Origin: Thecamonas trahens ATCC 50062
Lineage: Eukaryota > Protista > Apusomonadida
NCBI RefSeq assembly: GCF_000142905.1
Contig: NW_013657614.1
Location: forward strand, 52,803-116,802
Direction of reading: 5' to 3'
Length of the DNA stretch: 64,000 nt
Part shown: in pieces, positions 20,678 to 48,913 of the stretch
Layout of the letters: each line of letters opens with the position of its first letter
Position numbering within the stretch: the stretch's first letter is position 1
The notes under the pieces: generated by a model
Seen by the model: only the letters and a program-made list of their open reading frames with translations
Told to the model about the DNA's origin: nothing
Databases searched by the model: none
Made by a program: the position numbers and the translations under genes

Positions 20678-22531
20678 ATGTCGCTCCTCTCGCCGCAGTC
20701 GTCCGAGAACACTGGCGTGGTGGGCCTCCACTCCAAGCCGACGGAAGAGCTTGCGCTGGATGCGCCCTTCCGCCCTGTCCGCTTCTCCAAGGTCTACCAC
20801 TCGCTCCAGCACAAGCCCTGGGCTGACCACTATGTCCCCTACACCGACATGGTCCGCAAGCTCGCCGCCCTTGTTTCCGTCGAAGCCGCCACTCTCTCCG
20901 AAGCCGGCGCCTCCGATCCTCCGCTCCCGCTCAATCTCATCGAGCGAGTCGCTCTGCCCGATGAGCATCCGGCCGGCGCAGATCTGGAGGAGGTCATGCC
21001 CGAGCTGGACGACGTCGACATCGATCCCGAGACAAAGAGCTTCCGCAGGTGGATCGCAGATCTCGAGGCCTCGCGCAAGGCCGTGGCTAGCTTCATCGAG
21101 GGCAATCTTGATGACCTACGCGCCTTTATTGCCCGGCGCAAGCTCCTTCTCGAGCGTATCGAGGCCGGCACAGAGCCGGCCGTCGACGACGACAGCGCCC
21201 ACGACGCCCTCGTCGACGAGCTCGCCGGTGACAACACCGTCGGCGACACTGCTGCCCGCCTCCACGAGTTTATCGACCTCAATGCTGAGGCCCTCACCCG
21301 CCTCTGTCGCTCGTACGAGGCCCTTGTCGGCACCCCGCACGAGGTTGTCCACGCCATCGAGGTCATGCAGGCCGACACCAACACTGCCATCTCCGCCCTC
21401 GTCGTCACAGACCACACCATCCGCGTCAAGCTTCTCGAGGCCCTCGTCGCCGCTCCCTCGCGCCAGTCCTCGCCCGAGCCAGCCTCGACCCCTGCGTCCT
21501 CGTCGGTGCCCACCGGCCTCGCCTGGCGCGCCGTCGACGCCGTCGTCGTCGACGAGCTCGACCTCGACTCACTCGCCCTCGGCAAGACACATAAGATCTG
21601 GGTCCGCATCATCGACACCGCCGTCGGTATTCCGCTCAAGGTCCCCGTCCTCGTCGCCCGCGGCAAGCTGCCGGGCAAGATCCTTGGCCTCACCGCTGCC
21701 CTCCATGGCAACGAGGTCAACGGCATCCCGGTCATCCAGTCTGTCTTCTCGCTCCTCAACCCTGCAAAGCTTTGTGGCACCGTCGTCGGCGTCCTCGTCG
21801 CAAACGTCGTCGGCTACGAGGAGTCCACCCGCGGCATGGGCCTCCGCGGCAAGGACCTCAACCGCTGCTTCCCCGGCCGCCCTGACGGCGACTGCGAGGC
21901 GCAGTACGTCTACTGGCTCTTCCAGAAGATCATTGCAAAGTTTGAGGTCCTCATCGACCTCCACACCGCCTCACAGGGCCGCGAGAACTCGCTCTACGTC
22001 CGCGCCTCCATGAACAACGACGAGGTCGCCGCCATCGCCCAGCTCCAAAAGTCGCAGATCATCGTCCACAACACCTCGCCCGACGGCTCGCTCCGCGCAG
22101 CCGCCATGGCCGAAGGCATCCCTGCCATCACCGTCGAAATCGGCGACTGCTCCGTCCTCCAGCCGCGCTTCGTCTCACACGCCCGCCGCGGCATCTTCAA
22201 CATCCTCTCCTACTACTCTATTATCGCTGCTCCCATTGTTTCTTACGGCGACCGCGACACCGTCGTCTGCGGCAAGTCCTCCTGGATTTACACCCCAGTC
22301 GGCGGCATGCTCCGCATCTACCCACGTCTCACCCAGTGGGTCGAGGAGGGTGAGGAAATTGCTGTCATTCGCTCTGTCTTTGGCGCTATCGTCCACCGCG
22401 TCCCCGCGCCCTGCCGCGGCATCATCATCGGCCGTGCAACAAACCCGGTCGCCCGCGCCGGCGACCGTATCGTCCACATCGGAACAGTCGTGTCCTCATT
22501 CGCCGCAGAGTCGCACGACGGCCACGAGTAG
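20678..22531 (+). CDS. SPX-like domain fused to a succinylglutamate desuccinylase/aspartoacylase (M14 AstE/AspA) Zn-hydrolase, 617 aa
   Basis: VRFSKVY...KPWADHYVPYTDMVRKL and LHEFIDLNAEALTRLCRSYE resemble the SPX first and last helices. ALHGNEVNG, DLNRCFPG, IDLHTAS and ITVEIG are intact; lipoyl-like C-terminal domain. Confidence 0.9.
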   Translation: MSLLSPQSSENTGVVGLHSKPTEELALDAPFRPVRFSKVYHSLQHKPWADHYVPYTDMVRKLAALVSVEAATLSEAGASDPPLPLNLIERVALPDEHPAGADLEEVMPELDDVDIDPETKSFRRWIADLEASRKAVASFIEGNLDDLRAFIARRKLLLERIEAGTEPAVDDDSAHDALVDELAGDNTVGDTAARLHEFIDLNAEALTRLCRSYEALVGTPHEVVHAIEVMQADTNTAISALVVTDHTIRVKLLEALVAAPSRQSSPEPASTPASSSVPTGLAWRAVDAVVVDELDLDSLALGKTHKIWVRIIDTAVGIPLKVPVLVARGKLPGKILGLTAALHGNEVNGIPVIQSVFSLLNPAKLCGTVVGVLVANVVGYEESTRGMGLRGKDLNRCFPGRPDGDCEAQYVYWLFQKIIAKFEVLIDLHTASQGRENSLYVRASMNNDEVAAIAQLQKSQIIVHNTSPDGSLRAAAMAEGIPAITVEIGDCSVLQPRFVSHARRGIFNILSYYSIIAAPIVSYGDRDTVVCGKSSWIYTPVGGMLRIYPRLTQWVEEGEEIAVIRSVFGAIVHRVPAPCRGIIIGRATNPVARAGDRIVHIGTVVSSFAAESHDGHE

Positions 22532-39702: not shown

Positions 39703-41424
39703 TTACTCGGTCGCGTCTGGAGCTGTTGGCGTCGCGCTGGTCATCGGGTCGTGGTCGACGATGGTTTCGAGGTTGTAGCGGGCGCGGATGTCGGCGGCAA
39801 ACTCGGGGTCGACCCTCTCGATGCCGACGCAGATCTCCTCCAACAGCGGAGCATCGGCGCAGAGCGAGTAGAAGAGGTCGACGTCAAAGCCGCGCTCGTC
39901 GTCCGACTTGCGCAGCTCCTCAAGCTCGGCGGCAGGTGTCTCCATCGACGAGTCAGTCGACTCCTTGGCGCCGGTGACCCGGAGCGCCATGACGTCGATG
40001 GCCATGACAGCCATGACCGACTGCACGAAGCCGGCAATGAGGTCGTCAAGCCCGATGCCAAGCTGCGCAAACTGCCGCCGGTCGCAAAGGATGAGGCGCG
40101 ACGAGTCGGTCGAAGAGAGCGAGGTAGAGAGGTTCGTCCCGAGGCACGCCCAGGAGTCGAGCCCGTCGTCGATGGCACGCGGCAGCGGCTCGCGCGCACG
40201 CCGCGCGTACATGGCCAGCGGCGCAAGCCCACGGCCGGGCACGTTGCCCACCATGAACCGCAGGTCCGCCACAAACGTCTTGCCCTTCTTCGTCGGCATC
40301 ATGCCCACGTGGTACAGCCGCCCGGCGCCCGGTGTGTGCGACGACCAGTTAGCCCCGCCCACCAGGCCCTGCACAATGAACACGTCGTACGGAAGGCTCT
40401 TGGCATCCTCCATAAACTCCGCGAGCTCGCGCGGCGAAGTGATGCACCACACCCCGGCTCCGGCGTTGCCATACGGCGACTTGACCACCGCCACTCCGCC
40501 GAGCGATGCCACGTACAGCGGGACCGACGCAAGCTGCACATCGTTGACCGTGTACGGCGCCAGAATCCGGAGACCAGAGTCCGAAAGCTGCGCAGAGAGG
40601 AGCTTGTACGCCTTGGACGCCACAAGCTTGTTGCGCCCTCCTGCGAGGCACGCCGCCACAGAGTTCATGATCACCGTCTTGATCGGAGTCACCGGCAGCG
40701 CGCACCATGGCTTCTGAGTCACGTACCGCATGCACGCCCGGATTGCCACCCACTCGCCCTCGGGCGAGAGCACATACATGACCGAGTCCTCAAACTTGAC
40801 CGCGGGCTCGTCGTCGTTGTAGTGGTACTCGACAAGGAAGACCTCCTCGTCAAAGACGTCGGCCATCGTCTTGGCATAGCCCGACGCCTCCATGTAGTTC
40901 TTGTCAAACAGGACCGCCAGCCGGCCGCCGGGCACCCGCTCGGACGACCCGGCTTCGGCCGTTTTGAACGCCGTCTGCATGTGCGTCGCGTACGCCCCGT
41001 GCTCGATCGAGTCGTTGAGCGGCGGCATCGACTTTTGCCCCGACGGGCTCGAGTTGGTCTCCACCACGCACATCCGCCGAACACCCTCGGCGTTGGTCAC
41101 GTTGAACAGATCCGTCCCCGCCCACGGCAGGAGCTGCGGCTCGTAGTTGAGCACCTGCTTGAGCGCATCCTCATCAACCTCGGGATGGAGGTGCGAGTAG
41201 CGAGCAGCAATCTGCTCCTTTGTCATGTTGAAAAAGTACGAGACCAGCGGATGTGGGACGGCATTGAGCGTCCGCTCGTAGAAATGATCCGAAGGCACAA
41301 AGGTTCCAGGAGAAACAACCACCGTCGAACCCTCCACTCCCTTGAGCAGCCGCTGCCGCTTGCCGCTTGCGTCCGTGTCGGCCTTTGAAAAGTACTTGGC
41401 CTTGCCAGCTGCTTCCGCGCTCAT
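39703..41424 (-). CDS. Circularly permuted ATP-grasp amidoligase-like protein, 573 aa
   Basis: The metal-binding D...ExN motif (AGTDLF...VVETNSSPSG) lies N-terminal to RNKLVA, VVKSPYGNAGAGV, FIVQGL and DLRFMV, which is the permuted order of ATP-grasp motifs. Confidence 0.78.
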   Translation of the reverse strand: MSAEAAGKAKYFSKADTDASGKRQRLLKGVEGSTVVVSPGTFVPSDHFYERTLNAVPHPLVSYFFNMTKEQIAARYSHLHPEVDEDALKQVLNYEPQLLPWAGTDLFNVTNAEGVRRMCVVETNSSPSGQKSMPPLNDSIEHGAYATHMQTAFKTAEAGSSERVPGGRLAVLFDKNYMEASGYAKTMADVFDEEVFLVEYHYNDDEPAVKFEDSVMYVLSPEGEWVAIRACMRYVTQKPWCALPVTPIKTVIMNSVAACLAGGRNKLVASKAYKLLSAQLSDSGLRILAPYTVNDVQLASVPLYVASLGGVAVVKSPYGNAGAGVWCITSPRELAEFMEDAKSLPYDVFIVQGLVGGANWSSHTPGAGRLYHVGMMPTKKGKTFVADLRFMVGNVPGRGLAPLAMYARRAREPLPRAIDDGLDSWACLGTNLSTSLSSTDSSRLILCDRRQFAQLGIGLDDLIAGFVQSVMAVMAIDVMALRVTGAKESTDSSMETPAAELEELRKSDDERGFDVDLFYSLCADAPLLEEICVGIERVDPEFAADIRARYNLETIVDHDPMTSATPTAPDATE

Positions 41425-41428
41425 GATT

Positions 41429-41464
<36 letters not shown>

Positions 41465-41683
41465 GTGCTGCGCGCTTGTGGGTGAGTGTTCCCGATCGGT
41501 CGGCTTGTGGCACCTGTATGTGTTTTGGGAAGAAGTCGTCATGCCACGCTCTCGTCACATAGTGCTGCCTTTTTGTCAGGAATTCCACTCGTGGCCAAAA
41601 AAAGCTCTCAAATGGCCGCTTTGTCCGCTTTGTCCGCTTTGTCCGCTTTGTCCGCTTTGTCCACCTCGTCCGCCTCGTCCGCC
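41429..41683. repeat. (GA)n microsatellite at about 41430-41461 and 9-mer ccgctttgt x5 plus cc[ag]cctcgt copies at about 41616-41683
   Basis: Direct reading; lies immediately upstream of the 39703..41424 gene. Confidence 0.9.
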
Positions 41684-41917
41684 ATTCTCGCCAAGCACTG
41701 GTTTGTCCACCATTCTTACCAAGCACTGGTTTGACCACAGCTACTGCCGTTAATGCATCCCGCCCTCCTCCTCCTCGCCACCGCCGTGCGCAGGATCGTC
41801 GACCAAGGCTCAAGTCGGCCGGTCAAGCCGAGCTCCGGCTCCAGCCCTTGCATCATGCCCTCCTCTCCCATCAGGCTCATCATAACTTGAAAGACTTCAT
41901 TTTCTCCACCTGCACAA

Positions 41918-44203
41918 CTACACAACCCAGCCCTCGTGGTCCGAGACCCGCTGAACGATGTAGGTCCAGAGGGCGTGCATGCCGCGGGCGACGACCGGCT
42001 CGCCCGAGACCTCCTCCATCGGGGCGAGGCCGCCAACGTTGGACGCGTTGAGCTCCGAGAGCACTCGCTTGCCGTCGTCGCCGACGAGGGTGTCGATACC
42101 GTAAAACGTGATGTTGTGCTTGCGGAGGACCGGGTCAAGCTTGCGGATGAGCTCGACCTCGTCGTCGTCGGCGGCGGCGACATGCGATGTCCCGCCCATC
42201 GACGCGTTGCACACCCAGTTGCCCTGCTGCGGGAGGCGGATGGAGGAGGCGATGATGCGGCCGTCGATGACCACGGTCCGCTTGTCGCCCTCGCGCACGC
42301 CCTCCAGGAACTTCATGCACACCACGCCGTGAAAGAGGTCGTAGTCCGGGTCAGATCCGTCCGACCGCGGCGTCGGCATTGCGTTGTCGAGCACACCCCG
42401 CAAGTGGCTCTCGACGTACTCCTCCCACGCCACACCGACCTTGTCGTGCTCGACAAAGACCCGTCCGTCGGCCGCCACCCGGGTGATGCCCTTACCGCCG
42501 CCGTCTTGCACAGGCTTGATCACAATCGCCGGGTACTCGGCCCGGAACGCCTCGACCTCGGCCACCGTCTTGCAGTACGCCAGCGGCGCGCAGAGCTCGG
42601 CCACCTCGGGCAGCCAGCCTTTGGAGCACACCCGCAGAAAGTCGGTCGTCCCGTTGATGATCCGCCACTCGTCCACCATCCGCGCCATGCCGTCGAGGAA
42701 CGCCCGCGTCACCGGCCGCGAGAGGCGCGGAAAGACAACGTCAAAGTCTGCAAGCGACATCTGCCGCGCCGTCGCAAAGTTGACCTCGGTCAGCGGCTTC
42801 CACCCAAACTTGGGCCCGACCTTGTGGACCCACACAGACTCGGCGTCGTGCGGCGGGTAGAAGAACGATGTGTTCGCCGGGTTGAACCGCGACGCCACAA
42901 ACACGCCCTCAGCCGCAGGGTGGTCCGCCAGCGCCCGCGCCATCGACCACAGCGAGTTGGCCTTCTTCGACGTCGCGTGGTCCATCACAATGAGCATCCG
43001 CAGCTGCCGCCGTGTTGCCGCCTTTTGCCGCAGCGCATGCGCCGTCGCCGCAGACGCCTCGCGCCGCGCGAGAATCGCGTCGAGAATAAACGGCGCCGCG
43101 TTGCGCGCCGTGCCCTCGGACGGGAACGCGTGCATCCGCAAGCCCGGCGAGGTGTTCGCCTCCAGAATGCAGCACCCAGCCGACGCCAGCGGCGCCTCCA
43201 TATCCGCCACAATCACGTCGATGCCCACAAGATCCAGCATCAGCGCCTCGGCAACCTCCACGCACATCTGCTTAATCTCTGGGTGCAGCCGGTCCGTCAC
43301 GTCGACCGCGTTGCCGCCGGCGGACAGGTTGGAAATGCCCAGCAGCTGCACCTTTTCACCGGCCGCAGGCACTCGCGCCAGCGCGCCCATTCCCAGATAG
43401 GCAGACACCGCCGCTGCGTCGATGACCGACCGCGGGTGTGTGTGCCCGGGCCCGCGCGTCGGGTCCGTGTTGAGCGCGTCCACAAGGTCGGCCACGCTCG
43501 ACTCCCCGTCGCCCACAGCCACCGGCGCCGTCCGCATCGACGCCGCAAACACTCCGCCGGCAATGACCAGAATCCGCAGCTCGGTCCCGACTGCCTGCCG
43601 CTGGGCCAGAAACGGAATAGGCTTGCGCGCGTTGGTGCCGAGCATCGACATCGACGTCGCCACCCGCGCCGCCGCCGTCAGATCCGCAACCTCGGCGTCG
43701 GTCAGCCCCTCGGGCTCGTCGGCAGACCCAGCATTAGCCCGCGGAGGCGCAATGTCGAGTACCACGCCCTCGCCGTGCGCCCCGTCCGTCGGCTTGATCA
43801 CCGTCGCGCACCCGGCCTGCTGGTTCGCCCGCACAAACTGCGTCAGCCGCTCGAGATCAGACTCGGGAATGTCGCCAAACCGGAGCACGCACCGCAGCGA
43901 CTTGGCCGTAGGCAGCGAGCGCCGCTCCAGGAGCACCGCGCACGCAGCCTTGTTCTCCGCAAGCCGGTGGCCAATGGCCGACCCGAGCTCCGTCCGCGCC
44001 CGCTGGAACACAATCGGCGTCGAGTCCGGCGGCCACACCGCAGCCATGTTCGATGCTCCCTCCAGCACCTCACACTTCCACCCACGCCGATGCGCCTCGG
44101 CCAGCAGCAGCTGATTCGAAATAGAGAGCTCAGCCCACTCGCTCTCGGCAAGCTCCACCCCTGTGCTTCCTGCGCCACCCGAGGTGCCCGCGACGTTGCT
44201 CAT
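41918..44203 (-). CDS. Tandem double ATP-grasp ligase: cyanophycin-synthetase/GshF-type domain + bacterial glutathione-synthetase (GshB)-type domain, 761 aa
   Basis: Domain 1: ELSISNQLLLAEAHRRG, KPTDGAHGEGV, ELRILV, VGDGESSV..L...N.DP.RG.GH, SNLSAGG.AVDVTD..HP, GIDV, LEANTSPGLRMH.FP. Domain 2: LADFDVVFPR, KPVQDGGGKG, EGDKR, NASMGG, YGIDTL, SELNASNVGG. Likely start accATG at 44203. Confidence 0.9.
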   Translation of the reverse strand: MSNVAGTSGGAGSTGVELAESEWAELSISNQLLLAEAHRRGWKCEVLEGASNMAAVWPPDSTPIVFQRARTELGSAIGHRLAENKAACAVLLERRSLPTAKSLRCVLRFGDIPESDLERLTQFVRANQQAGCATVIKPTDGAHGEGVVLDIAPPRANAGSADEPEGLTDAEVADLTAAARVATSMSMLGTNARKPIPFLAQRQAVGTELRILVIAGGVFAASMRTAPVAVGDGESSVADLVDALNTDPTRGPGHTHPRSVIDAAAVSAYLGMGALARVPAAGEKVQLLGISNLSAGGNAVDVTDRLHPEIKQMCVEVAEALMLDLVGIDVIVADMEAPLASAGCCILEANTSPGLRMHAFPSEGTARNAAPFILDAILARREASAATAHALRQKAATRRQLRMLIVMDHATSKKANSLWSMARALADHPAAEGVFVASRFNPANTSFFYPPHDAESVWVHKVGPKFGWKPLTEVNFATARQMSLADFDVVFPRLSRPVTRAFLDGMARMVDEWRIINGTTDFLRVCSKGWLPEVAELCAPLAYCKTVAEVEAFRAEYPAIVIKPVQDGGGKGITRVAADGRVFVEHDKVGVAWEEYVESHLRGVLDNAMPTPRSDGSDPDYDLFHGVVCMKFLEGVREGDKRTVVIDGRIIASSIRLPQQGNWVCNASMGGTSHVAAADDDEVELIRKLDPVLRKHNITFYGIDTLVGDDGKRVLSELNASNVGGLAPMEEVSGEPVVARGMHALWTYIVQRVSDHEGWVV

Positions 44204-44592
44204 GGTGTCGTCAAAGTCGTTGGTCTTGGTGAGGAACGGAGGCTCCAACAAATCGCTACACCACCGTGTTGCTGACGTTGCCTGTTGCTTGCGTGACAAG
44301 CGGTTGCCTTTTGCTTGCGTGACAAGCGGAGGTTGCGTCACGCACCCGCAACTCGTCACTCTGCTTTTTAACTCGGACTTGTTCCCCGGTCAAAAATGGT
44401 CGTGGTTCGGGCACGGCCATTCCCTCCTCGACTTCGGCCCGGACACGGCACCTCTTTGACCTGCATCTGGCCACCACAAAACTCCACCACAAAGCGAGGT
44501 CAGAGACTCGGACGTTTGTTCCTCCTCTCACCCGCAACCTGCAACCGCAATCCGCATCCCGCACCCCGCAACCCCGACACACGGCATCAAGC

Positions 44593-46974
44593 ATGCTCCT
44601 GGCCACGCTCATCGTCGCGCCGTGGGTCCTTGTCGCTGGCCTCACGGCGCTGGTGGTGGTCCTCGCGGCTCGGCTCTCGCCGGCCAAATCGGCGGCCTCT
44701 GAGCTTGTGGTCGGCGCATCGGTGGATGGACCAGGCCATTGGCGGTATGCTTGTGCCGAGGGAGGGCCTGTCTTCCCCTCACCCAAGGCCTCGGCCCTCC
44801 CGCCGGGCGGGCCATCATCCAAGCGGGTCGCCCGCCTCGCCTCGCGCATCTCGCTCTACCATCGGGTCGAGCTCGGGAGCCGCAAGATCGCCCGCCTCGC
44901 GCCGACCACCGCCGCCGCCCTCCTCTCGGTCATGGACGCCATGGATGCCATCGATGAGGTCTATCTGGTCCAGGCGTGGCGGAAGAACCCAAAGCTCCGC
45001 GAGTATCTCGTCGCCCGCCTCTGGAGCTCGCCGCCGGCCTGGCGCCGGTACCTCTCAGACGAGCTCGAGTTCTTTGACTTTAACAAGGGCCCGTTTGACA
45101 AGCTCGAGGATAGGGTGTTTGTCAAGCCGCTGCGCGGCGTGGTCCTCCCGCCGTCGGCCCCGCCGGGATCCGGCCTCTACCCGCCGTTCATGATGACCCG
45201 CATGGACGTCGGCGAGTGGCTGATGGCGTGGGAGGAACATGTGGCGTCGCTGGGCGAGGACGCGAGCCCGCCCGCCGATCCGACATCGCCTGTCGTTGCC
45301 CTCGTTGCCTCGTCGGCGCCCGACGCTGTCGCCGGTGTCGCCGTCCGCCCGTACTCTCGCCTGTACGCGCGGACGCTCTCGCGCGCCGCCGCCGCCATGC
45401 GCGCCGCCGCCCGCCACGTCCGCACTCCCGAGCTCGTCACCTTTCTGCACTCGCGCGCCGCTGCGTTCATGACTAACAACTACGCCGCATCCGAGGCCGA
45501 CTGGCTCGCCGTTCCCTTTGCCAACGCCGAGTTTGTCCTTGTCATCGGCCCGTACTCCAAGTACGGCGATCAGCTGGCGTCGACTAAGCGGGCATTCAAG
45601 GCCGTCGTCGCCATTCCGCAGCGCGAGCTCTCGACGGNNNNNNNNNNNNNNNNNNNNNNNNNNNNNNNNNNNNNNNNNNNNNNNNNNNNNNNNNNNNNNN
45701 NNNNNNNNNNNNNNNNNNNNNNNNNNNNNNNNNNNNNNNNNNNNNNNNNNNNNNNNNNNNNNNNNNNNNNNNNNNNNNNNNNNNNNNNNNNNNNNNNNNN
45801 NNNNNNNNNNNNNNNNNNNNNNNNNNNNNNNNNNNNNNNNNNNNNNNNNNNNNNNNNNNNNNNNNNNNNNNNNNNNNNNNNNNNNNNNNNNNNNNNNNNN
45901 NNNNTCGCCGACGCGCTGCGGCTGGCCGGCTCGGCCGGCGCCGGCCCGCAGCCGACGGCCTCGAACCTCCCGTCGCCCGGCATCCTCAAGGGCAAGCACG
46001 GCTCGATCCGCCTCATCCTCGCCAATGTGCTCAAGGCCAAGTATGTTCACATCCTCAAGCCCGGCGCCAAGCTTGTGTACGATCGCAACGACGCGGCCAA
46101 GCTCTCGTTTGAAAGCTTTATGCTCTGCGTCGTCTACCACGAGCTCTACCACGGGCTCGGTCCCAAGCGAGTCTCGCTCGAGAGCTCGCCGCACTACGGC
46201 AAGCTCATCAACGCGGCCATGGGCCCGATCCACTCGCCGCTCGAGGAGGCCAAGGCCAACATCGGCGGCTTCTGGGGCCTGCTGCGCATGCTCCGCCGCG
46301 ATCCAGCCACCCTCCCCTTCCCCGACGGCATCGAGGACGTCCTCGCGGACGTCAGCATCGGCTCGGTCTGCCATACCTTTGTCGCCTCGCTCTTCCGCTC
46401 CATGCGCTTTGGCCTCCACGAGGCCCACGGCCGGGCCGCCATGCTCCAGTTCCACTTTCTCCTCGCCCGCGGCGCCATCACCACCGCCATCTCGCGCTCG
46501 GTCTCGCTCGACTCGATCGCTGGCGTCGCCGACGCCGAGTACGACTCGGACGACTCGGGCCTGTCCGAGGACTGGAAGCCGACCTACGCCCGCACCTCCT
46601 TCAAGGTTCATCCCGACAAGCTCTACAACTCGGCCTACGCCCTTCTCGGTGAGATCATCGCCGTCCAGGCTGCTGGCGACACCGCCGCTGGCGCCGCCCT
46701 CCTCGACGAGTACGCCTCATCAGTCGCTGTCGACGCCGCCATGGCCCTCGAGGCCATGGCCCGTATCCCCACAGACATCCGCCCAGACTACTCCAACCTC
46801 CGCTCGCTCCTCCGCAGCAACATCGCCTCGGCTGGCTTCCGCGACTCTATCCTCTCCGACGACGATTCGGACACTGACCATGACTCGGACTCGGACTCGG
46901 ACGACGGCGAGGACCACGATGAGCTCTCCGACAACTCCGGCGACGACGATGACGACGAGGCCTTTGTCAGATAG
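44593..46974 (+). CDS. Dipeptidyl peptidase III (peptidase M49, HEXXH type) with N-terminal TM anchor; contains a gap
   Basis: NKGPFDKLED..F, PPGSGLYP, NNYAASEADW, IGPY, ASNLP, NVLKAKY, HELYHGLGP, LEEAKAN, FRSMRFGLHEAHGRA, IPTDI. Confidence 0.9.
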   Translation: MLLATLIVAPWVLVAGLTALVVVLAARLSPAKSAASELVVGASVDGPGHWRYACAEGGPVFPSPKASALPPGGPSSKRVARLASRISLYHRVELGSRKIARLAPTTAAALLSVMDAMDAIDEVYLVQAWRKNPKLREYLVARLWSSPPAWRRYLSDELEFFDFNKGPFDKLEDRVFVKPLRGVVLPPSAPPGSGLYPPFMMTRMDVGEWLMAWEEHVASLGEDASPPADPTSPVVALVASSAPDAVAGVAVRPYSRLYARTLSRAAAAMRAAARHVRTPELVTFLHSRAAAFMTNNYAASEADWLAVPFANAEFVLVIGPYSKYGDQLASTKRAFKAVVAIPQRELSTXXXXXXXXXXXXXXXXXXXXXXXXXXXXXXXXXXXXXXXXXXXXXXXXXXXXXXXXXXXXXXXXXXXXXXXXXXXXXXXXXXXXXXXXXXADALRLAGSAGAGPQPTASNLPSPGILKGKHGSIRLILANVLKAKYVHILKPGAKLVYDRNDAAKLSFESFMLCVVYHELYHGLGPKRVSLESSPHYGKLINAAMGPIHSPLEEAKANIGGFWGLLRMLRRDPATLPFPDGIEDVLADVSIGSVCHTFVASLFRSMRFGLHEAHGRAAMLQFHFLLARGAITTAISRSVSLDSIAGVADAEYDSDDSGLSEDWKPTYARTSFKVHPDKLYNSAYALLGEIIAVQAAGDTAAGAALLDEYASSVAVDAAMALEAMARIPTDIRPDYSNLRSLLRSNIASAGFRDSILSDDDSDTDHDSDSDSDDGEDHDELSDNSGDDDDDEAFVR

Positions 46975-47178
46975 CAACCAGTGTGTACCATGCGCCCGTC
47001 CCCATCACCATGACACGTTTAACACCGATCCAGCCGGCGGCTGCCAACGACAGCTGGAACCTGCCGACTCTTGCCGACGCTTACCCCGCCTACTTACGCC
47101 TGCCCACACCTACTCACACCGGGCTGCGTCTGCTCCCCGCCTGCGGCAGCCTGATCAACATCTACGGCACTGCAGCCA

Positions 47179-47834: not shown

Positions 47835-48629
47835 TCAGTCGACGATGGCAATCGAGAGCAGGCCTTGCGGCTTGTAAGGGTACGGAAGCTTGCCAAAGGT
47901 GTTGTTGTGGACGACGACGCCGAGGTCGTTGACCAGAATCTGCCACACCTGCTTGATGTCTGCCGGCCACGAGTGGACACAGCCGTGCGAGTTGGGCAGC
48001 GGGAGCGAGGGGTCAAAGTCACCAGTATGCATAAGGATGCCGTCGCGGATGTCCGAAATGAGGAAGGCGGCGTTGCCGGCGAGACCCTGGACCGCCCGGT
48101 TGACCGGGTACGGTCCAAAGTCCTTGACGTCCTCCTCGGGCGTGTTGAGATCAAAGGTCATGAGCCCAGTCGGCGTCGAGCCGTCCCCAGCAAGCATGTT
48201 GAGCGCCGTGCCGTCCGCCGCATTCTGCCCGTGAGTCTTGACCGGAAACGAGAACCGCAGGTTGTTGTCGGCATCGTACAGCGAGGCCGAGACCTCGACC
48301 GACCGGTTCTTGAACACCGGGATGTACACCTTGTACTTGAAGCCAGGAAGGACCGTGCCCGAGTCCTTGTATCCGTCGTACATGTGGAGGTCGAGCAAGA
48401 GGTTGGTCGTCTCGGCGCCAGCGATCCCGTCGTCGCTCAGCTTGTTGCCACTCTGGAACGCCTCCACCGCGTTCTTGGTCGCCTCGCCGTACTCGCCCGA
48501 CGCCACAAGGCCTGACACGTGCGGCGACCGTAGCAGCAGCGACTGGAGAATCGTCACATCCGAGCCCTTCATCAGCTGCGGCGGCGTGTACGACAGATCG
48601 CGCGAGAACGGCGCCGTAAACTGGGCGCC
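47835..48629 (-). CDS. Peptidoglycan-binding domain + YkuD/L,D-transpeptidase-family catalytic domain (3' exon; 5' exon probably in the gap)
   Basis: PGBD: MKGSDVTILQSLL...GEYGEATKNAVEAFQSGNKLSDDGIAGAET. YkuD: TPTG...GILMHTG...NSHGCVH. Acceptor GCGACAG| at 48630. Confidence 0.85.
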   Translation of the reverse strand, partial: GAQFTAPFSRDLSYTPPQLMKGSDVTILQSLLLRSPHVSGLVASGEYGEATKNAVEAFQSGNKLSDDGIAGAETTNLLLDLHMYDGYKDSGTVLPGFKYKVYIPVFKNRSVEVSASLYDADNNLRFSFPVKTHGQNAADGTALNMLAGDGSTPTGLMTFDLNTPEEDVKDFGPYPVNRAVQGLAGNAAFLISDIRDGILMHTGDFDPSLPLPNSHGCVHSWPADIKQVWQILVNDLGVVVHNNTFGKLPYPYKPQGLLSIAIVD

Positions 48630-48913
48630 CTGTCGCCCTCCACAACCGACAACACGCATGCAAGCACGCACACAAGCACACCAANNNNNNNNNNNNNNNN
48701 NNNNNNNNNNNNNNNNNNNNNNNNNNNNNNNNNNNNNNNNNNNNNNNNNNNNNNNNNNNNNNNNNNNNNNNNNNNNNNNNNNNNTCCCCACTCCCCAATC
48801 CCCTCCGCCTAAGCCCAAGCACCCCCCCCCTTCCCTCCAAACTGATCGGACGAGAACAAGTCACGCGCTGCGAGCTCACCACAACCCACCACCTCACCAC
48901 TACACCTCCAACA

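What the first reader, a model, noticed from the sequence alone, without database searches (positions are those of the whole stretch)
39703..46974. Candidate eukaryotic peptide make-and-break cluster: three ATP-grasp active sites next to a dipeptidyl peptidase III
Seen: two adjacent co-oriented intronless genes (493-bp spacer) carry three ATP-grasp domains of three different types (circularly permuted, CphA/GshF-like, GshB-like), all with intact Lys and D/ExN motifs. An M49 dipeptidyl peptidase is transcribed divergently across only 389 bp. Known: ATP-grasp amidoligases build non-ribosomal peptides (glutathione, cyanophycin, RimK-type tags), and bacterial ligase operons often include a peptidase; such functional clustering is uncommon in protists, and these genes are not tandem duplicates of one another. 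Inference: a pathway that makes a di/tri-peptide or a cyanophycin-like polymer (one ligase forms a dipeptide, the CphA-like domain polymerises it, DPP III recycles dipeptides), or an alternative glutathione-type route with no GshA gene in this window.
Basis: partly seen in the sequence, partly recalled or inferred. Interest (0 to 1): 0.85.

Follow-up and report, generated by a model that had tools for sequence, protein, structure and literature searches.

The report
Bacterial peptide-ligase operon kept clustered in a protist
Three neighbouring genes of the protist Thecamonas trahens (two ATP-dependent amide-bond ligases with three active sites, and a zinc dipeptidyl peptidase) are the eukaryotic version of an unnamed, uncharacterised bacterial operon, so their adjacency is functional, although the compound they make is still unknown.

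Summary
G1 (39703-41424, -) is a circularly permuted ATP-grasp enzyme, shown by fold. G2 (41918-44203, -) fuses a cyanophycin-synthetase-G-domain-like ATP-grasp to a GshB-like one. G3 (44593-46974, +) is an HEXXH-type M49 peptidase. The assembly gap is really 102 bases and in frame.

The adjacency is not chance:
- In 39 of 68 informative bacterial loci, mostly Saprospiraceae, the G1 homologue is followed directly by a GshB-like gene, then an AstE/AspA-family hydrolase. These GshB-like proteins are the closest relatives of G2's C-domain.
- Another 11 loci have G1 followed directly by AstE.
- The window's own AstE/AspA gene lies 17 kb away (20678-22531).
- A marine metagenome contig from a related eukaryote keeps G1, G2, G3 and AstE together at 56-62% identity. 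Orientations differ and the flanks are unrelated.

G2's N-domain and G3 are lineage-specific additions; G3's membership rests on those two genomes only.

Thecamonas also has canonical GCL, GSS and DPP III, so an alternative glutathione route is unlikely.

Most likely this is a stepwise ATP-dependent ligase pathway with its own hydrolases that makes a small peptide-like compound. The product, and whether it is a polymer, a protein tag or a polyamine conjugate, is unresolved. Co-expression could not be measured.

The parts
39703..41424 (-). G1: circularly permuted ATP-grasp carboxylate-amine ligase of an unnamed family; 573 aa, single copy
   Evidence: ORF. No Pfam, NCBIfam or PDB sequence hit. 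AF2 model pLDDT 84; best fold matches are 3k1t Z 15.5, 3n6x, eukaryotic GS and GspS. E122-x-N124 and K315 are invariant in 30 homologues. More than 1643 homologues. Single copy in the genome. An RNA contig covers the 5' part up to 41421.
41425..41917 (.). 493-bp spacer between G1 and G2
   Evidence: Coordinates. RNA contig depth drops here in both metatranscriptomes, which fits separate transcripts.
41918..43027 (-). G2 C-domain (residues 393-761 of the 761-aa form): GshB-like ATP-grasp, counterpart of the second gene of the bacterial operon
   Evidence: PF02955 2.6e-25. Alignment to 1gsa keeps the catalytic motifs. Best homologues are ~335-aa Saprospiraceae/Lewinellaceae proteins (30-36% id, down to E 7e-65), whereas true GshB reaches only 1e-9 to 1e-14. 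These homologues lie directly downstream of G1 homologues in bacteria.
43028..44203 (-). G2 N-domain (residues 1-392): CphA-G-domain / GshF-type ATP-grasp, fused only in this lineage
   Evidence: TIGR02068 5.6e-56 and NF002688 3.5e-40, both far below cut-off. PDB 7wac 3.5e-36 with the Lys and E-x-N motifs kept. Nearest relatives are stand-alone ~320-aa ATP-grasps (E 5e-55 to 2e-52). No hit in any of the 80 bacterial G1 loci. The full-length fusion occurs only in P0121 (this gene) and P0122.
44204..44592 (.). 389-bp divergent spacer between G2 and G3, probably a bidirectional promoter
   Evidence: RNA contigs of G2 end at about 44303-44315 and those of G3 begin at about 44581-44609. There is almost no RNA depth between them.
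44593..46974 (+). G3: HEXXH (pentapeptide-motif) M49 dipeptidyl-peptidase-III-like zinc peptidase with a hydrophobic N-terminus. It is interrupted by assembly gap 45638-45904, whose true length is 102 nt and in frame; the real protein is ~738 aa
   Evidence: PDB 5zum 1.2e-32 and 6eom 1.6e-23, with HELYH and EEAKAN. Gap bridged by X1 and X4 contigs. Both halves are colinear with the L006 orthologue. The N-terminal hydrophobic segment is conserved in exon 1 of the L006 orthologue.
20678..22531 (+). AstE/AspA-family zinc hydrolase (catalytic part about residues 300-612) with a helical N-terminal extension of ~280 aa. It is the eukaryotic counterpart of the third gene of the bacterial operon, 17 kb from G1
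   Evidence: PF24827 4.5e-32. 40-46% identical to the gene that follows GshB-like or G1 in 62 of 80 bacterial loci. Its orthologue lies next to G3 on L006. Single copy. AF2 model: long helices at 120-258, AstE fold from ~290.

Best explanation
G1, G2 and the AstE/AspA-like gene 17 kb away are the eukaryotic descendants, or counterparts, of an uncharacterised bacterial three-gene operon: a permuted ATP-grasp ligase, then a GshB-like ATP-grasp ligase, then an AstE/AspA-family amidohydrolase.

The organism is the apusomonad Thecamonas trahens. In it and in a marine relative the genes have stayed together. The GshB-like gene has gained a second, CphA-G/GshF-type ligase domain by fusion, and an M49 HEXXH dipeptidyl peptidase has joined the cluster.

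Proposed mechanism, inferred from the chemistry of the families: each ATP-grasp site activates a carboxylate as an acyl-phosphate and couples it to an amine. Two successive amide bonds are therefore made in bacteria and up to three in the protist, giving a small non-ribosomal, glutathione-like (iso)peptide or amino-acid conjugate. The AstE/AspA-like enzyme hydrolyses an N-acyl-Asp/Glu-type bond of that compound. G3 trims or degrades the longer apusomonad product.

Shown here:
- the domain identities and intact catalytic motifs;
- the bacterial operon;
- conservation of the cluster in a second eukaryote;
- presence of the genes in RNA libraries;
- closure of the assembly gap.

Inferred: the order of the reactions, the substrates, the nature of the product, and the role of G3.
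For: Bacterial operon:
- Of 68 bacterial loci with enough downstream sequence, 39 have G1 -> GshB-like -> AstE, 11 have G1 -> AstE, and 3 have G1 -> GshB-like only.
- Median intergenic gaps are 3 and -11 nt.
- The flanking genes vary from locus to locus.
- By tblastn, G2 residues ~393-761 hit 52 of 80 loci and the window's AstE protein hits 62 of 80, always on the G1 strand just downstream.
- G2's C-domain is closest to exactly these operon proteins (E down to 7e-65) and far from true GshB (E 1e-9 to 1e-14).

Eukaryotic cluster:
- G1, G2 and AstE are each single copy in a 28.7-Mb genome yet lie within 24 kb.
- Contig L006 carries orthologues of AstE, G3, G2 and G1 side by side at 56-62% identity, with G2 inverted relative to the window.
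- The next gene on L006, a Xaa-Pro aminopeptidase, maps to another Thecamonas contig.
- L006 has an intron in G3, so it is eukaryotic. The window's flanking genes are also eukaryotic: dynactin p62 and BRO1.

Active sites and expression:
- Catalytic motifs are intact in all three ATP-grasp sites and in G3.
- RNA-library contigs from two independent metatranscriptome studies cover G1, G2 and G3 and drop out in the spacers.
- The closest stand-alone relative of G2's N-domain whose neighbourhood was informative (P0218, 44% identity) sits in a bacterial operon with RimK and a RimB-like protease. That is again two ligases plus a peptidase.
Against: - No substrate or product is known for any member of the G1 family, which has no Pfam or NCBIfam model.
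- G3 and G2's N-domain are absent from all 80 bacterial loci. A G3-like gene was found in 1 of 5 operon-bearing genomes, ~100 kb from the operon. G3's membership therefore rests on only two related eukaryotic genomes.
- G3 has a hydrophobic N-terminus and the ligases do not, so they may work in different compartments.
- Fungal G1 homologues (Spizellomyces, Podila) stand alone among unrelated genes. Fifteen of 68 bacterial loci have G1 without either partner. G1 can therefore work without the others.
- The G1 tree does not place the apusomonads inside the sampled operon-bearing bacteria, so neither transfer of the operon as a unit nor its direction is shown.
- Contig data cannot show co-expression.
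Confidence: 0.6

Rival explanations
1. Cyanophycin-like storage polymer. The core ligases make a dipeptide or branched unit. G2's CphA-G-like domain polymerises it, as CphA2 polymerises beta-Asp-Arg. G3 releases dipeptides from the polymer, and the AstE-like enzyme splits them.
For: G2's N-domain is significantly similar to the CphA1 G domain and to the CphA2-type chains 8fxh and 7ta5. The two apusomonad-specific additions are exactly a CphA-G-type ligase domain and a dipeptide-releasing exopeptidase.
Against: - G2 scores 190 bits against a cut-off of 850 for TIGR02068.
- No Mur-ligase M domain or CphA N domain was detected.
- Stand-alone ~320-aa ATP-grasps of unknown function are closer to the N-domain than any CphA.
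- Characterised DPP IIIs act on ordinary alpha-peptides (PMC5805324, PMC9820243).
- There is no evidence of a polymer.
Confidence: 0.13
2. Protein C-terminal tagging system, as with RimK on ribosomal protein S6 or the TTLL/CCP pair on tubulin. The ligases add amino acids (for example Glu) to the C-terminus of a protein, and the AstE-like and M49 enzymes remove them.
For: - G1 and G2's C-domain also resemble RimK, LysX/ArgX and TTLL folds.
- The closest N-domain relative whose neighbourhood was informative sits with RimK and a RimB-like protease.
- A small protein with an acidic tail lies inside the operon in 4 loci and nearby in a fifth.
- SET-like and 2OG-oxygenase-like genes lie upstream in some loci; they were identified by sequence motifs only.
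Against: - The acidic-tail protein is in only 5 of 80 loci.
- The best matches of all three sites are small-molecule ligases: the PF08886-type structure 3k1t, GshB, and CphA/GshF.
- Characterised members of the AstE/AspA family act on N-acyl amino acids (my own knowledge of the family).
Confidence: 0.1
3. Polyamine conjugation. G1 has a fold close to glutathionylspermidine and trypanothione synthetases and couples a carboxylate to a polyamine or agmatine; the other enzymes extend or hydrolyse the conjugate.
For: - GspS, YgiC and trypanothione synthetase are among the fold matches of G1 over its permuted N-terminal part.
- Arginine/ornithine decarboxylase, agmatinase-type and deoxyhypusine-synthase-like genes are inserted between G1 and the GshB-like gene in L040, L054 and L068. 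They follow AstE in L049, L077 and L095.
Against: - Polyamine genes occur in only 8-13 of 80 loci, all from closely related Saprospiraceae.
- The GspS matches (Z ~11) are no better than generic ATP-grasp matches.
- No polyamine genes lie near the cluster in Thecamonas.
Confidence: 0.1
4. Alternative glutathione-type route. G2 is annotated 'glutathione synthetase', and G1 would act as a GshA substitute.
For: The public annotation of P0121 is 'glutathione synthetase'. G1's best structural match, 3k1t, was deposited as a putative gamma-glutamylcysteine synthetase, and the Atlas clusters nearest in structure carry PF08886 'GshA'. G2 has GshB-like and GshF-like domains.
Against: - Thecamonas has canonical eukaryotic GCLC (2.8e-95) and GSS (1.1e-89).
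- G2 scores ~100 bits against GshB cut-offs of 272-299.
- True GshB proteins are only remote hits.
- G1 has no sequence match to PF08886.
Confidence: 0.04
5. Chance adjacency of unrelated genes in a compact genome.
For: Fungal G1 homologues are unlinked to any such partner.
Against: The bacterial operon, the conserved cluster on L006 despite rearranged flanks, and three single-copy genes lying within 24 kb of a 28.7-Mb genome.
Confidence: 0.03

Closest known systems
Bacterial ATP-grasp amidoligase plus peptidase/deacylase operons (for example RimK with RimB; RimK-like ligases with AstE/AspA-family deacylases; surveyed by Iyer et al. 2009, Mol Biosyst 5:1636, which I could not read here)
   Same: One or two ATP-grasp ligases are co-transcribed with a hydrolase that can undo the bond. 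The closest N-domain relative whose neighbourhood was informative lies in such a RimK/RimB-like operon.
   Different: The first ligase (G1) belongs to an unnamed, circularly permuted family with no Pfam or NCBIfam model. This particular trio has no description that I could find. It also survives as a gene cluster in a eukaryote.
Glutathione biosynthesis (GshA + GshB; fused GshF)
   Same: Two successive ATP-dependent ligations by adjacent or fused enzymes. G2's C-domain keeps the catalytic motifs of GshB. G2's N-domain resembles the ATP-grasp half of GshF.
   Different: Scores lie far below the GshB and GshF cut-offs. No GshA-type domain is present. Canonical GCL and GSS exist elsewhere in the genome. 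A hydrolase is part of the module.
Cyanophycin synthetase CphA1/CphA2 with cyanophycinase and isoaspartyl dipeptidase
   Same: A G-domain-like ATP-grasp (7wac 3.5e-36) together with peptidases that would yield and split dipeptides.
   Different: No CphA N domain and no Mur-ligase M domain. A GshB-like domain takes their place. The peptidases belong to other families (M49 and AstE/AspA instead of S51 cyanophycinase and isoaspartyl dipeptidase).
Pentapeptide-motif DPP III (Caldithrix abyssi 6EOM, PMC5805324; Corallococcus sp. EGB 5ZUM, PMC9820243)
   Same: An HEXXH motif instead of HEXXGH, plus an EEAKAx second motif. E-values are 1.6e-23 and 1.2e-32 over the catalytic half.
   Different: G3 has a hydrophobic N-terminal segment, an acidic Ser/Asp-rich C-terminal tail, and N in place of the last D of EEAKAD. 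It is a second M49 gene beside a canonical DPP III and is linked to ligase genes.
Bacterial-origin pathway genes fused in Thecamonas trahens (CrtI-CrtB-CrtYc/d-Blh, PMC10016063)
   Same: Prokaryote-type pathway enzymes in the same organism, joined into a multidomain protein.
   Different: A different pathway. Here part of the pathway stays as separate neighbouring genes, and the donor and the direction of transfer are not resolved.

Membership tests
ATP-grasp superfamily, circularly permuted type (G1) | ATP-grasp fold | tested here: met
   AF2 model pLDDT 84. VIA-align: 3k1t Z 15.5 (330 residues aligned), ArgX 14.4, LysX 13.5, RimK 11.3, Ddl about 11.
ATP-grasp superfamily, circularly permuted type (G1) | ATP-binding Lys with Gly-rich loop, and an E/D-x-N Mg site, with the E-x-N segment placed N-terminal of the Lys | tested here: met
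   E122, N124, K315, G322 and G324 are invariant in 30 homologues. Classical ATP-grasps align only from residue ~165 onward. Permuted ones (GspS, eukaryotic GS, 3n6x) align from ~40-70.
Pfam CP_ATPgrasp_1/2 (PF04174, PF14403) and PF08886 'GshA' (G1) | A match to the family HMM | tested here: not met
   No Pfam family even at E <= 10. The A1 profile finds no PDB relative. The similarity is structural only.
Cyanophycin synthetase CphA1 (TIGR02068) (G2) | Score over the curated cut-off, with N, G and M (Mur-ligase) domains | tested here: not met
   190 bits against a cut-off of 850. Only profile positions 288-475 match. Pfam finds no Mur-ligase or CphA N domain.
Glutathione synthase GshB (TIGR01380 / NF003573) (G2 C-domain) | Score over the curated cut-off | tested here: not met
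   98.5 and 101.9 bits against cut-offs of 299 and 272. True GshB proteins reach only E 1e-9 to 1e-14.
Glutathione synthase GshB (G2 C-domain) | Catalytic residues of the ATP-grasp C-terminal half (the R210, R225, D273, E281 and N283 region of E. coli GshB; numbering from my own knowledge) | tested here: met
   The alignment to 1gsa residues 197-284 keeps GDKR, RxPQxG..N..GG and G(I/L)D....E(L/I)N.
Bifunctional GshF (NF002688) (G2) | An N-terminal GshA-type glutamate-cysteine ligase domain plus a C-terminal ATP-grasp | tested here: not met
   138 bits against a cut-off of 425. Only the ATP-grasp part (positions 573-751) matches.
Peptidase family M49 / DPP III (G3) | Zinc motif HEXX(G)H and second motif EEX(K/R)A(E/D) | tested here: met
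   HELYH and EEAKAN align with HELMH and EEAKAD of 5zum. The last acidic residue is replaced by Asn.
Peptidase family M49 / DPP III (G3) | A match to Pfam PF03571 | tested here: not met
   No Pfam hit for either half, even at E <= 10. The same model finds the canonical DPP III of this genome at 1.6e-210.
Peptidase family M49 / DPP III (G3) | Dipeptidyl-peptidase activity | not testable with these tools
   Activity is known for the relatives 6EOM and 5ZUM (PMC5805324, PMC9820243), not for G3.
AstE/AspA family (gene at 20678-22531) | PF24827 catalytic domain over the cut-off | tested here: met
   111.6 bits against a cut-off of 25.
Eukaryotic metabolic gene cluster | Non-homologous genes of one pathway that are adjacent, with the adjacency conserved in a diverged relative | tested here: met
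   L006 and L007 keep AstE, G3, G2 and G1 together at 56-62% identity, with changed orientation and unrelated outer flanks. The pathway link comes from the bacterial operon.
Eukaryotic metabolic gene cluster | Co-expression of the members | tested here: inconclusive
   All three genes are present in RNA-library contigs of two studies, but contigs give no expression levels.

The most novel reading that the evidence does not exclude
The bacterial trio and its apusomonad derivative make a so far undescribed non-ribosomal amide compound. The lineage-specific additions are a CphA-G-type ligase domain fused to the GshB-like ligase and a dipeptide-releasing M49 peptidase under a shared divergent promoter. 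In the apusomonads these additions would turn the compound into a repeat polymer that is built and dismantled on demand: a cyanophycin-like nitrogen or osmolyte store in a heterotrophic eukaryote.
Probability: 0.13. Interest if true: 0.85.

Novelty: new variant of a known kind. Interest (0 to 1): 0.6.

Why it matters
- It assigns genomic context to a large, well-conserved but unnamed enzyme family. G1 has more than 1600 homologues, at least 596 confirmed matches in the bacterial and archaeal species-genome collection, and members in early-diverging fungi including Pneumocystis.
- It defines a compact three-gene bacterial operon that can be expressed directly to find the product.
- It gives a clear case of a prokaryote-type pathway persisting as a physical gene cluster in a protist close to the animal-fungal lineage, with gene fusion and recruitment of an extra peptidase.
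- It corrects the public annotation 'glutathione synthetase' for G2.
- It closes an assembly gap inside G3.

Tried and rejected
- Pfam and NCBIfam on G1 and on both halves of G3 gave nothing. A profile of 30 G1 homologues against PDB sequences also gave nothing.
- My first frame for G3's C half (45905) was wrong; 45907 is the right one.
- The first two bacterial G1 neighbourhoods I looked at (P0105, P0113) and two fungal ones showed no partner genes. The operon appeared only in the 80-locus survey.
- A scan of JGI metagenome contigs with the G2 alignment found no further apusomonad-type locus, only one weak hit.
Only low-complexity matches resulted, so it gives no evidence of orthology.
- The PG_binding+YkuD gene right of G3 is absent from L006 and from the bacterial loci, so I did not count it as part of the module.
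- The Atlas search on the AstE N-terminal extension gave nothing. Its AF2 model shows only long helices.
- Iyer et al. 2009 (PMC3268129), the likeliest place for a prior description of such operons, is not held. Searches for locus tags and for the operon's components found no paper.
- The G1 tree was meant to find a donor. It gives three separate groups (apusomonads, fungi, prokaryotes) and no direction of transfer.
- The 102 letters that fill the gap were not printed by the tool, so I did not translate them.
- The L006 G3 orthologue has an intron. I compared its two exons separately by reference and did not join them.

Full report
**Organism and setting.** G2 is identical to a protein of Thecamonas trahens ATCC 50062, an apusomonad, that is annotated 'glutathione synthetase'. 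The contig is 184,978 bp long. The window is about 65% G+C. It carries ordinary eukaryotic genes near the finding, dynactin p62 and a BRO1-domain protein, so this is nuclear DNA of the protist and not a bacterial contaminant.

**The observation.**
- G1 is 39703-41424 (-), 573 aa.
- A 493-bp spacer follows.
- G2 is 41918-44203 (-) from its first ATG, 761 aa; the open frame runs on to 44359.
- A 389-bp divergent spacer follows.
- G3 is 44593-46974 (+).

**G2.**
- The N-domain matches the G domain of cyanophycin synthetase (TIGR02068 5.6e-56; 7wac 3.5e-36) and the ATP-grasp half of GshF.
- The C-domain matches PF02955 and E. coli GshB.
- The residue-level alignments keep the Lys / Gly-loop and E-x-N motifs in both domains.
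- All scores lie far below the curated cut-offs for CphA, GshB and GshF. G2 is therefore not a member of any of these equivalog families.

**G1.**
- It matches no Pfam or NCBIfam model and no PDB sequence.
- Its AlphaFold model is confident (pLDDT 84, pTM 0.87).
- Foldseek ranks permuted ATP-grasps first: 3n6x, 3k1t, eukaryotic glutathione synthetases and glutathionylspermidine synthetase.
- An independent all-against-representatives alignment gives 3k1t Z 15.5, with classical ATP-grasps aligning only from residue ~165.
- The invariant E122-x-N124 precedes the invariant K315.

**G3.**
- The Pfam M49 model misses it.
- Its C half matches two characterised DPP IIIs with the atypical pentapeptide zinc motif, 5zum (1.2e-32) and 6eom (1.6e-23).
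- HELYH and EEAKAN are in register with their motifs (PMC9820243, PMC5805324).

**The assembly gap.** Two contigs bridge 45637 to 45905 with 102 letters instead of the 267 Ns. One comes from the organism's own DNA run (X1). The other comes from a marine metatranscriptome (X4).
- The left part of the gene ends one base into a codon, and the right part resumes at 45907.
- So 1 + 102 + 2 = 105 bases, or 35 codons, and the frame is kept.
- The orthologue on L006 has 36 residues between the blocks that align to the two halves.
- G3 is therefore one continuous gene of about 738 aa.
- The tool did not print the 102 letters, so I did not translate them.

**RNA evidence.** Contigs from two independent metatranscriptome studies (X3 subsurface, X4 marine) lie on the 5' part of G1 up to 41421. 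They also lie on G2 from 41899 to about 44315 without gaps, and on G3 in pieces that begin at about 44581.
- Depth nearly vanishes in both spacers. This fits three separate transcripts and a G2/G3 bidirectional promoter of roughly 265 bp.
- Contigs cannot rank expression, so co-expression remains untested.

**Is the adjacency meaningful? First line of evidence: a second eukaryote.** The closest G1 relative (P0002, 56% identity) lies on a Tara Oceans contig (L006; L007 is a near-duplicate). That contig carries orthologues of G2 (62%), G3 (56-60%, both halves colinear) and an AstE/AspA-family protein.
- An intron in the L006 G3 gene shows the contig is eukaryotic. The 156-aa ORF called there is the opposite strand of G3's exon 1.
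- The order G1-G2-G3 is kept, but G2 is inverted relative to the window.
- The AstE orthologue is next to G3 on L006, whereas in the window it is 17 kb from G1 (20678-22531).
- The next gene on L006, a Xaa-Pro aminopeptidase, maps to a different Thecamonas contig.
- So the surroundings have been reshuffled while the trio stayed together.
- The G2 fusion itself has only these two full-length members among 5.8 billion proteins searched by words.

**Second and stronger line of evidence: bacteria.** The G1 family is large. It has more than 1643 hits. These are ~480-aa proteins of Bacteroidota and other bacteria, and longer proteins of Mortierellomycota, Mucoromycota, chytrids, Basidiobolus and Pneumocystis, all at about 45-54% identity.
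- A scan of one genome per prokaryotic species gave at least 596 confirmed matches, and I kept 80 loci.
- I ran tblastn with the window's proteins against these loci. G2 residues ~393-761 hit directly downstream of the G1 homologue in 52 loci, and the window's AstE protein hit directly after that in 62 loci.
- G2's N-domain, both halves of G3 and the neighbouring YkuD protein hit nothing.
- Clustering all neighbouring ORFs found only three families that recur in most loci. The dominant order is G1 -> GshB-like -> AstE, with variable flanks.
- Of 68 loci with enough downstream sequence, 39 have all three genes, 11 have G1 -> AstE (Tenacibaculum, Bacteriovoracaceae, Chloroflexota and some Saprospiraceae), 3 have G1 -> GshB-like, and 15 have neither partner.
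- Median gaps of 3 and -11 nt show operon spacing.
- Conversely, the best homologues of G2's C-domain anywhere are these ~335-aa operon proteins (E down to 7e-65). True GshB proteins are remote, and no fungal homologue appeared.
- G1, G2 and AstE are single copy in the 28.7-Mb genome. As a rough calculation of mine, the chance that two given genes both fall within 25 kb of a third is about (50 kb / 28.7 Mb) squared, or about 3e-6.

**What was added in the apusomonads.** G2's N-domain has its nearest relatives among stand-alone ~320-aa ATP-grasps, with E 5e-55 to 2e-52 against about 1e-35 for CphA.
- One of these, P0218, lies in a bacterial operon with a RimB-like protease and RimK.
- Domains of the same type also occur in bacterial multi-ATP-grasp fusions. 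Double-ligase proteins are therefore not unprecedented, but this combination is confined to the apusomonad pair.
- G3 is a second M49 gene beside a canonical DPP III found elsewhere in the genome.
- G3 has a hydrophobic N-terminal segment that is conserved in the L006 orthologue.
- A G3-like gene was found in only one of five operon-bearing prokaryotic genomes, about 100 kb from the operon.
- G3's link to the pathway thus rests on conserved adjacency in two related eukaryotes and a shared short divergent spacer. It is plausible but much weaker than the G1/G2/AstE link.

**Function.** The genome has canonical eukaryotic GCLC and GSS, so the cluster is not needed for glutathione.
- All three ligase sites are intact, and their best-matching relatives are small-molecule ligases. 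G1's best match, 3k1t, was deposited as a putative gamma-glutamylcysteine synthetase. The other matches are GshB and CphA/GshF.
- The conserved hydrolase belongs to a family whose characterised members cleave N-acyl-Asp/Glu compounds (established knowledge of AstE, aspartoacylase and DoeB).
- I therefore favour stepwise synthesis of a small (iso)peptide-like compound with dedicated hydrolysis.

The product is unknown, and three alternatives remain open:
- a protein C-terminal tag (RimK/TTLL-like). A small acidic-tail protein sits in the operon in a few loci;
- a polyamine conjugate. Polyamine biosynthesis genes are nested in the operon in some Saprospiraceae, and G1 resembles GspS-type folds.

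MscS-type channel genes next to the operon in 20 loci hint at an osmotic role.

**Evolution.** In a quick ML tree of G1, the apusomonads (100), the fungi (99) and the sampled prokaryotes (92) form three separate groups. The apusomonads have long branches and deviant composition.
- This neither shows nor excludes transfer of the operon as a unit.
- The GshB-like and this AstE-like gene were found only in bacteria and the apusomonad pair, which makes a bacterial origin of the module the simplest reading.
- Fungal G1 genes stand alone.
- G1 is rare across Bacteroidota as a whole: 3 of 201 sampled genomes.
- Thecamonas is already known to carry a bacterial-type carotenoid pathway fused into one protein (PMC10016063).

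**Verdict.** It needs three corrections:
- the ancestral hydrolase partner is the AstE/AspA gene 17 kb away;
- DPP III is a lineage-specific and less certain member;
- the glutathione alternative is unlikely.

The cluster is a new variant of the known theme of ATP-grasp ligase/peptidase operons. It is notable for its unnamed permuted ligase family and for surviving as a cluster in a eukaryote.

Noticed in passing
window 20678-22531 (+): An AstE/AspA-family hydrolase with a ~280-aa N-terminal extension that the bacterial homologues lack. The extension is conserved in the L006 orthologue. AF2 predicts long helices at 120-258 and low confidence before that. Its function is unknown.
   Followed up: partly
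L040, L054, L068 (between G1 and GshB-like); L049, L077, L095 (after AstE): Arginine/ornithine decarboxylase, arginase-family (agmatinase-type) and deoxyhypusine-synthase-like genes are nested in or attached to the bacterial operon in some Saprospiraceae. This suggests a link to polyamine metabolism.
   Followed up: partly
20 of the 80 bacterial loci, e.g. L018, L025, L029, L070, L084: An MscS-type mechanosensitive channel gene lies next to G1 or AstE in several different arrangements. This may hint at an osmolyte-related role.
   Followed up: no
L040:6883-7230, L045:3818-4162, L068:12942-13238, L072:7594-7980; a weaker match at L077:14909-15121: A small protein of ~100-128 aa with a strongly acidic C-terminal tail is encoded inside or beside the operon. 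It is a possible carrier or substrate protein, but occurs in only 5 loci.
   Followed up: partly
L051, L079, L080, L094 (c16); L058, L073, L083, L086, L094 (c21): SET-domain-like and 2OG-Fe(II)-oxygenase-like ORFs lie directly upstream of G1 in some loci. I identified them from sequence motifs only, not with Pfam.
   Followed up: no
L044 (Promethearchaeota MAG): An Asgard-archaeon MAG encodes a G1 homologue (45% identity) on a long branch, without the operon partners.
   Followed up: no
window 45380-45415: A (GCC)n stretch encoding an Ala-rich segment of G3. Environmental contigs show a 3-nt deletion here and the strain's own contig shows a 1-nt difference. Many unrelated contigs pile up on this low-complexity stretch.
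   Followed up: partly
window 47835-48818 (-): A PG_binding_1 + YkuD (L,D-transpeptidase-type) gene lies right of G3. It is bacterial in type but absent from L006 and from the bacterial operon loci.
   Followed up: partly
window 41000-46990 in runs X2, X3, X4: Sequence almost identical to this Thecamonas locus occurs in an estuary metagenome and in subsurface and marine metatranscriptomes. This organism, or a very close strain, is therefore widespread and active in the environment.
   Followed up: no
G000:C21:115690-116325: A third, very weak Peptidase_M49 match (6.8e-5), besides the canonical DPP III at C44:144332-146011.
   Followed up: no
L006:5886-6010: The intron of the L006 G3 orthologue is ~100 nt long and rich in CA repeats. 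The automatic gene call there missed exon 1 and called a spurious 156-aa ORF on the opposite strand.
   Followed up: yes
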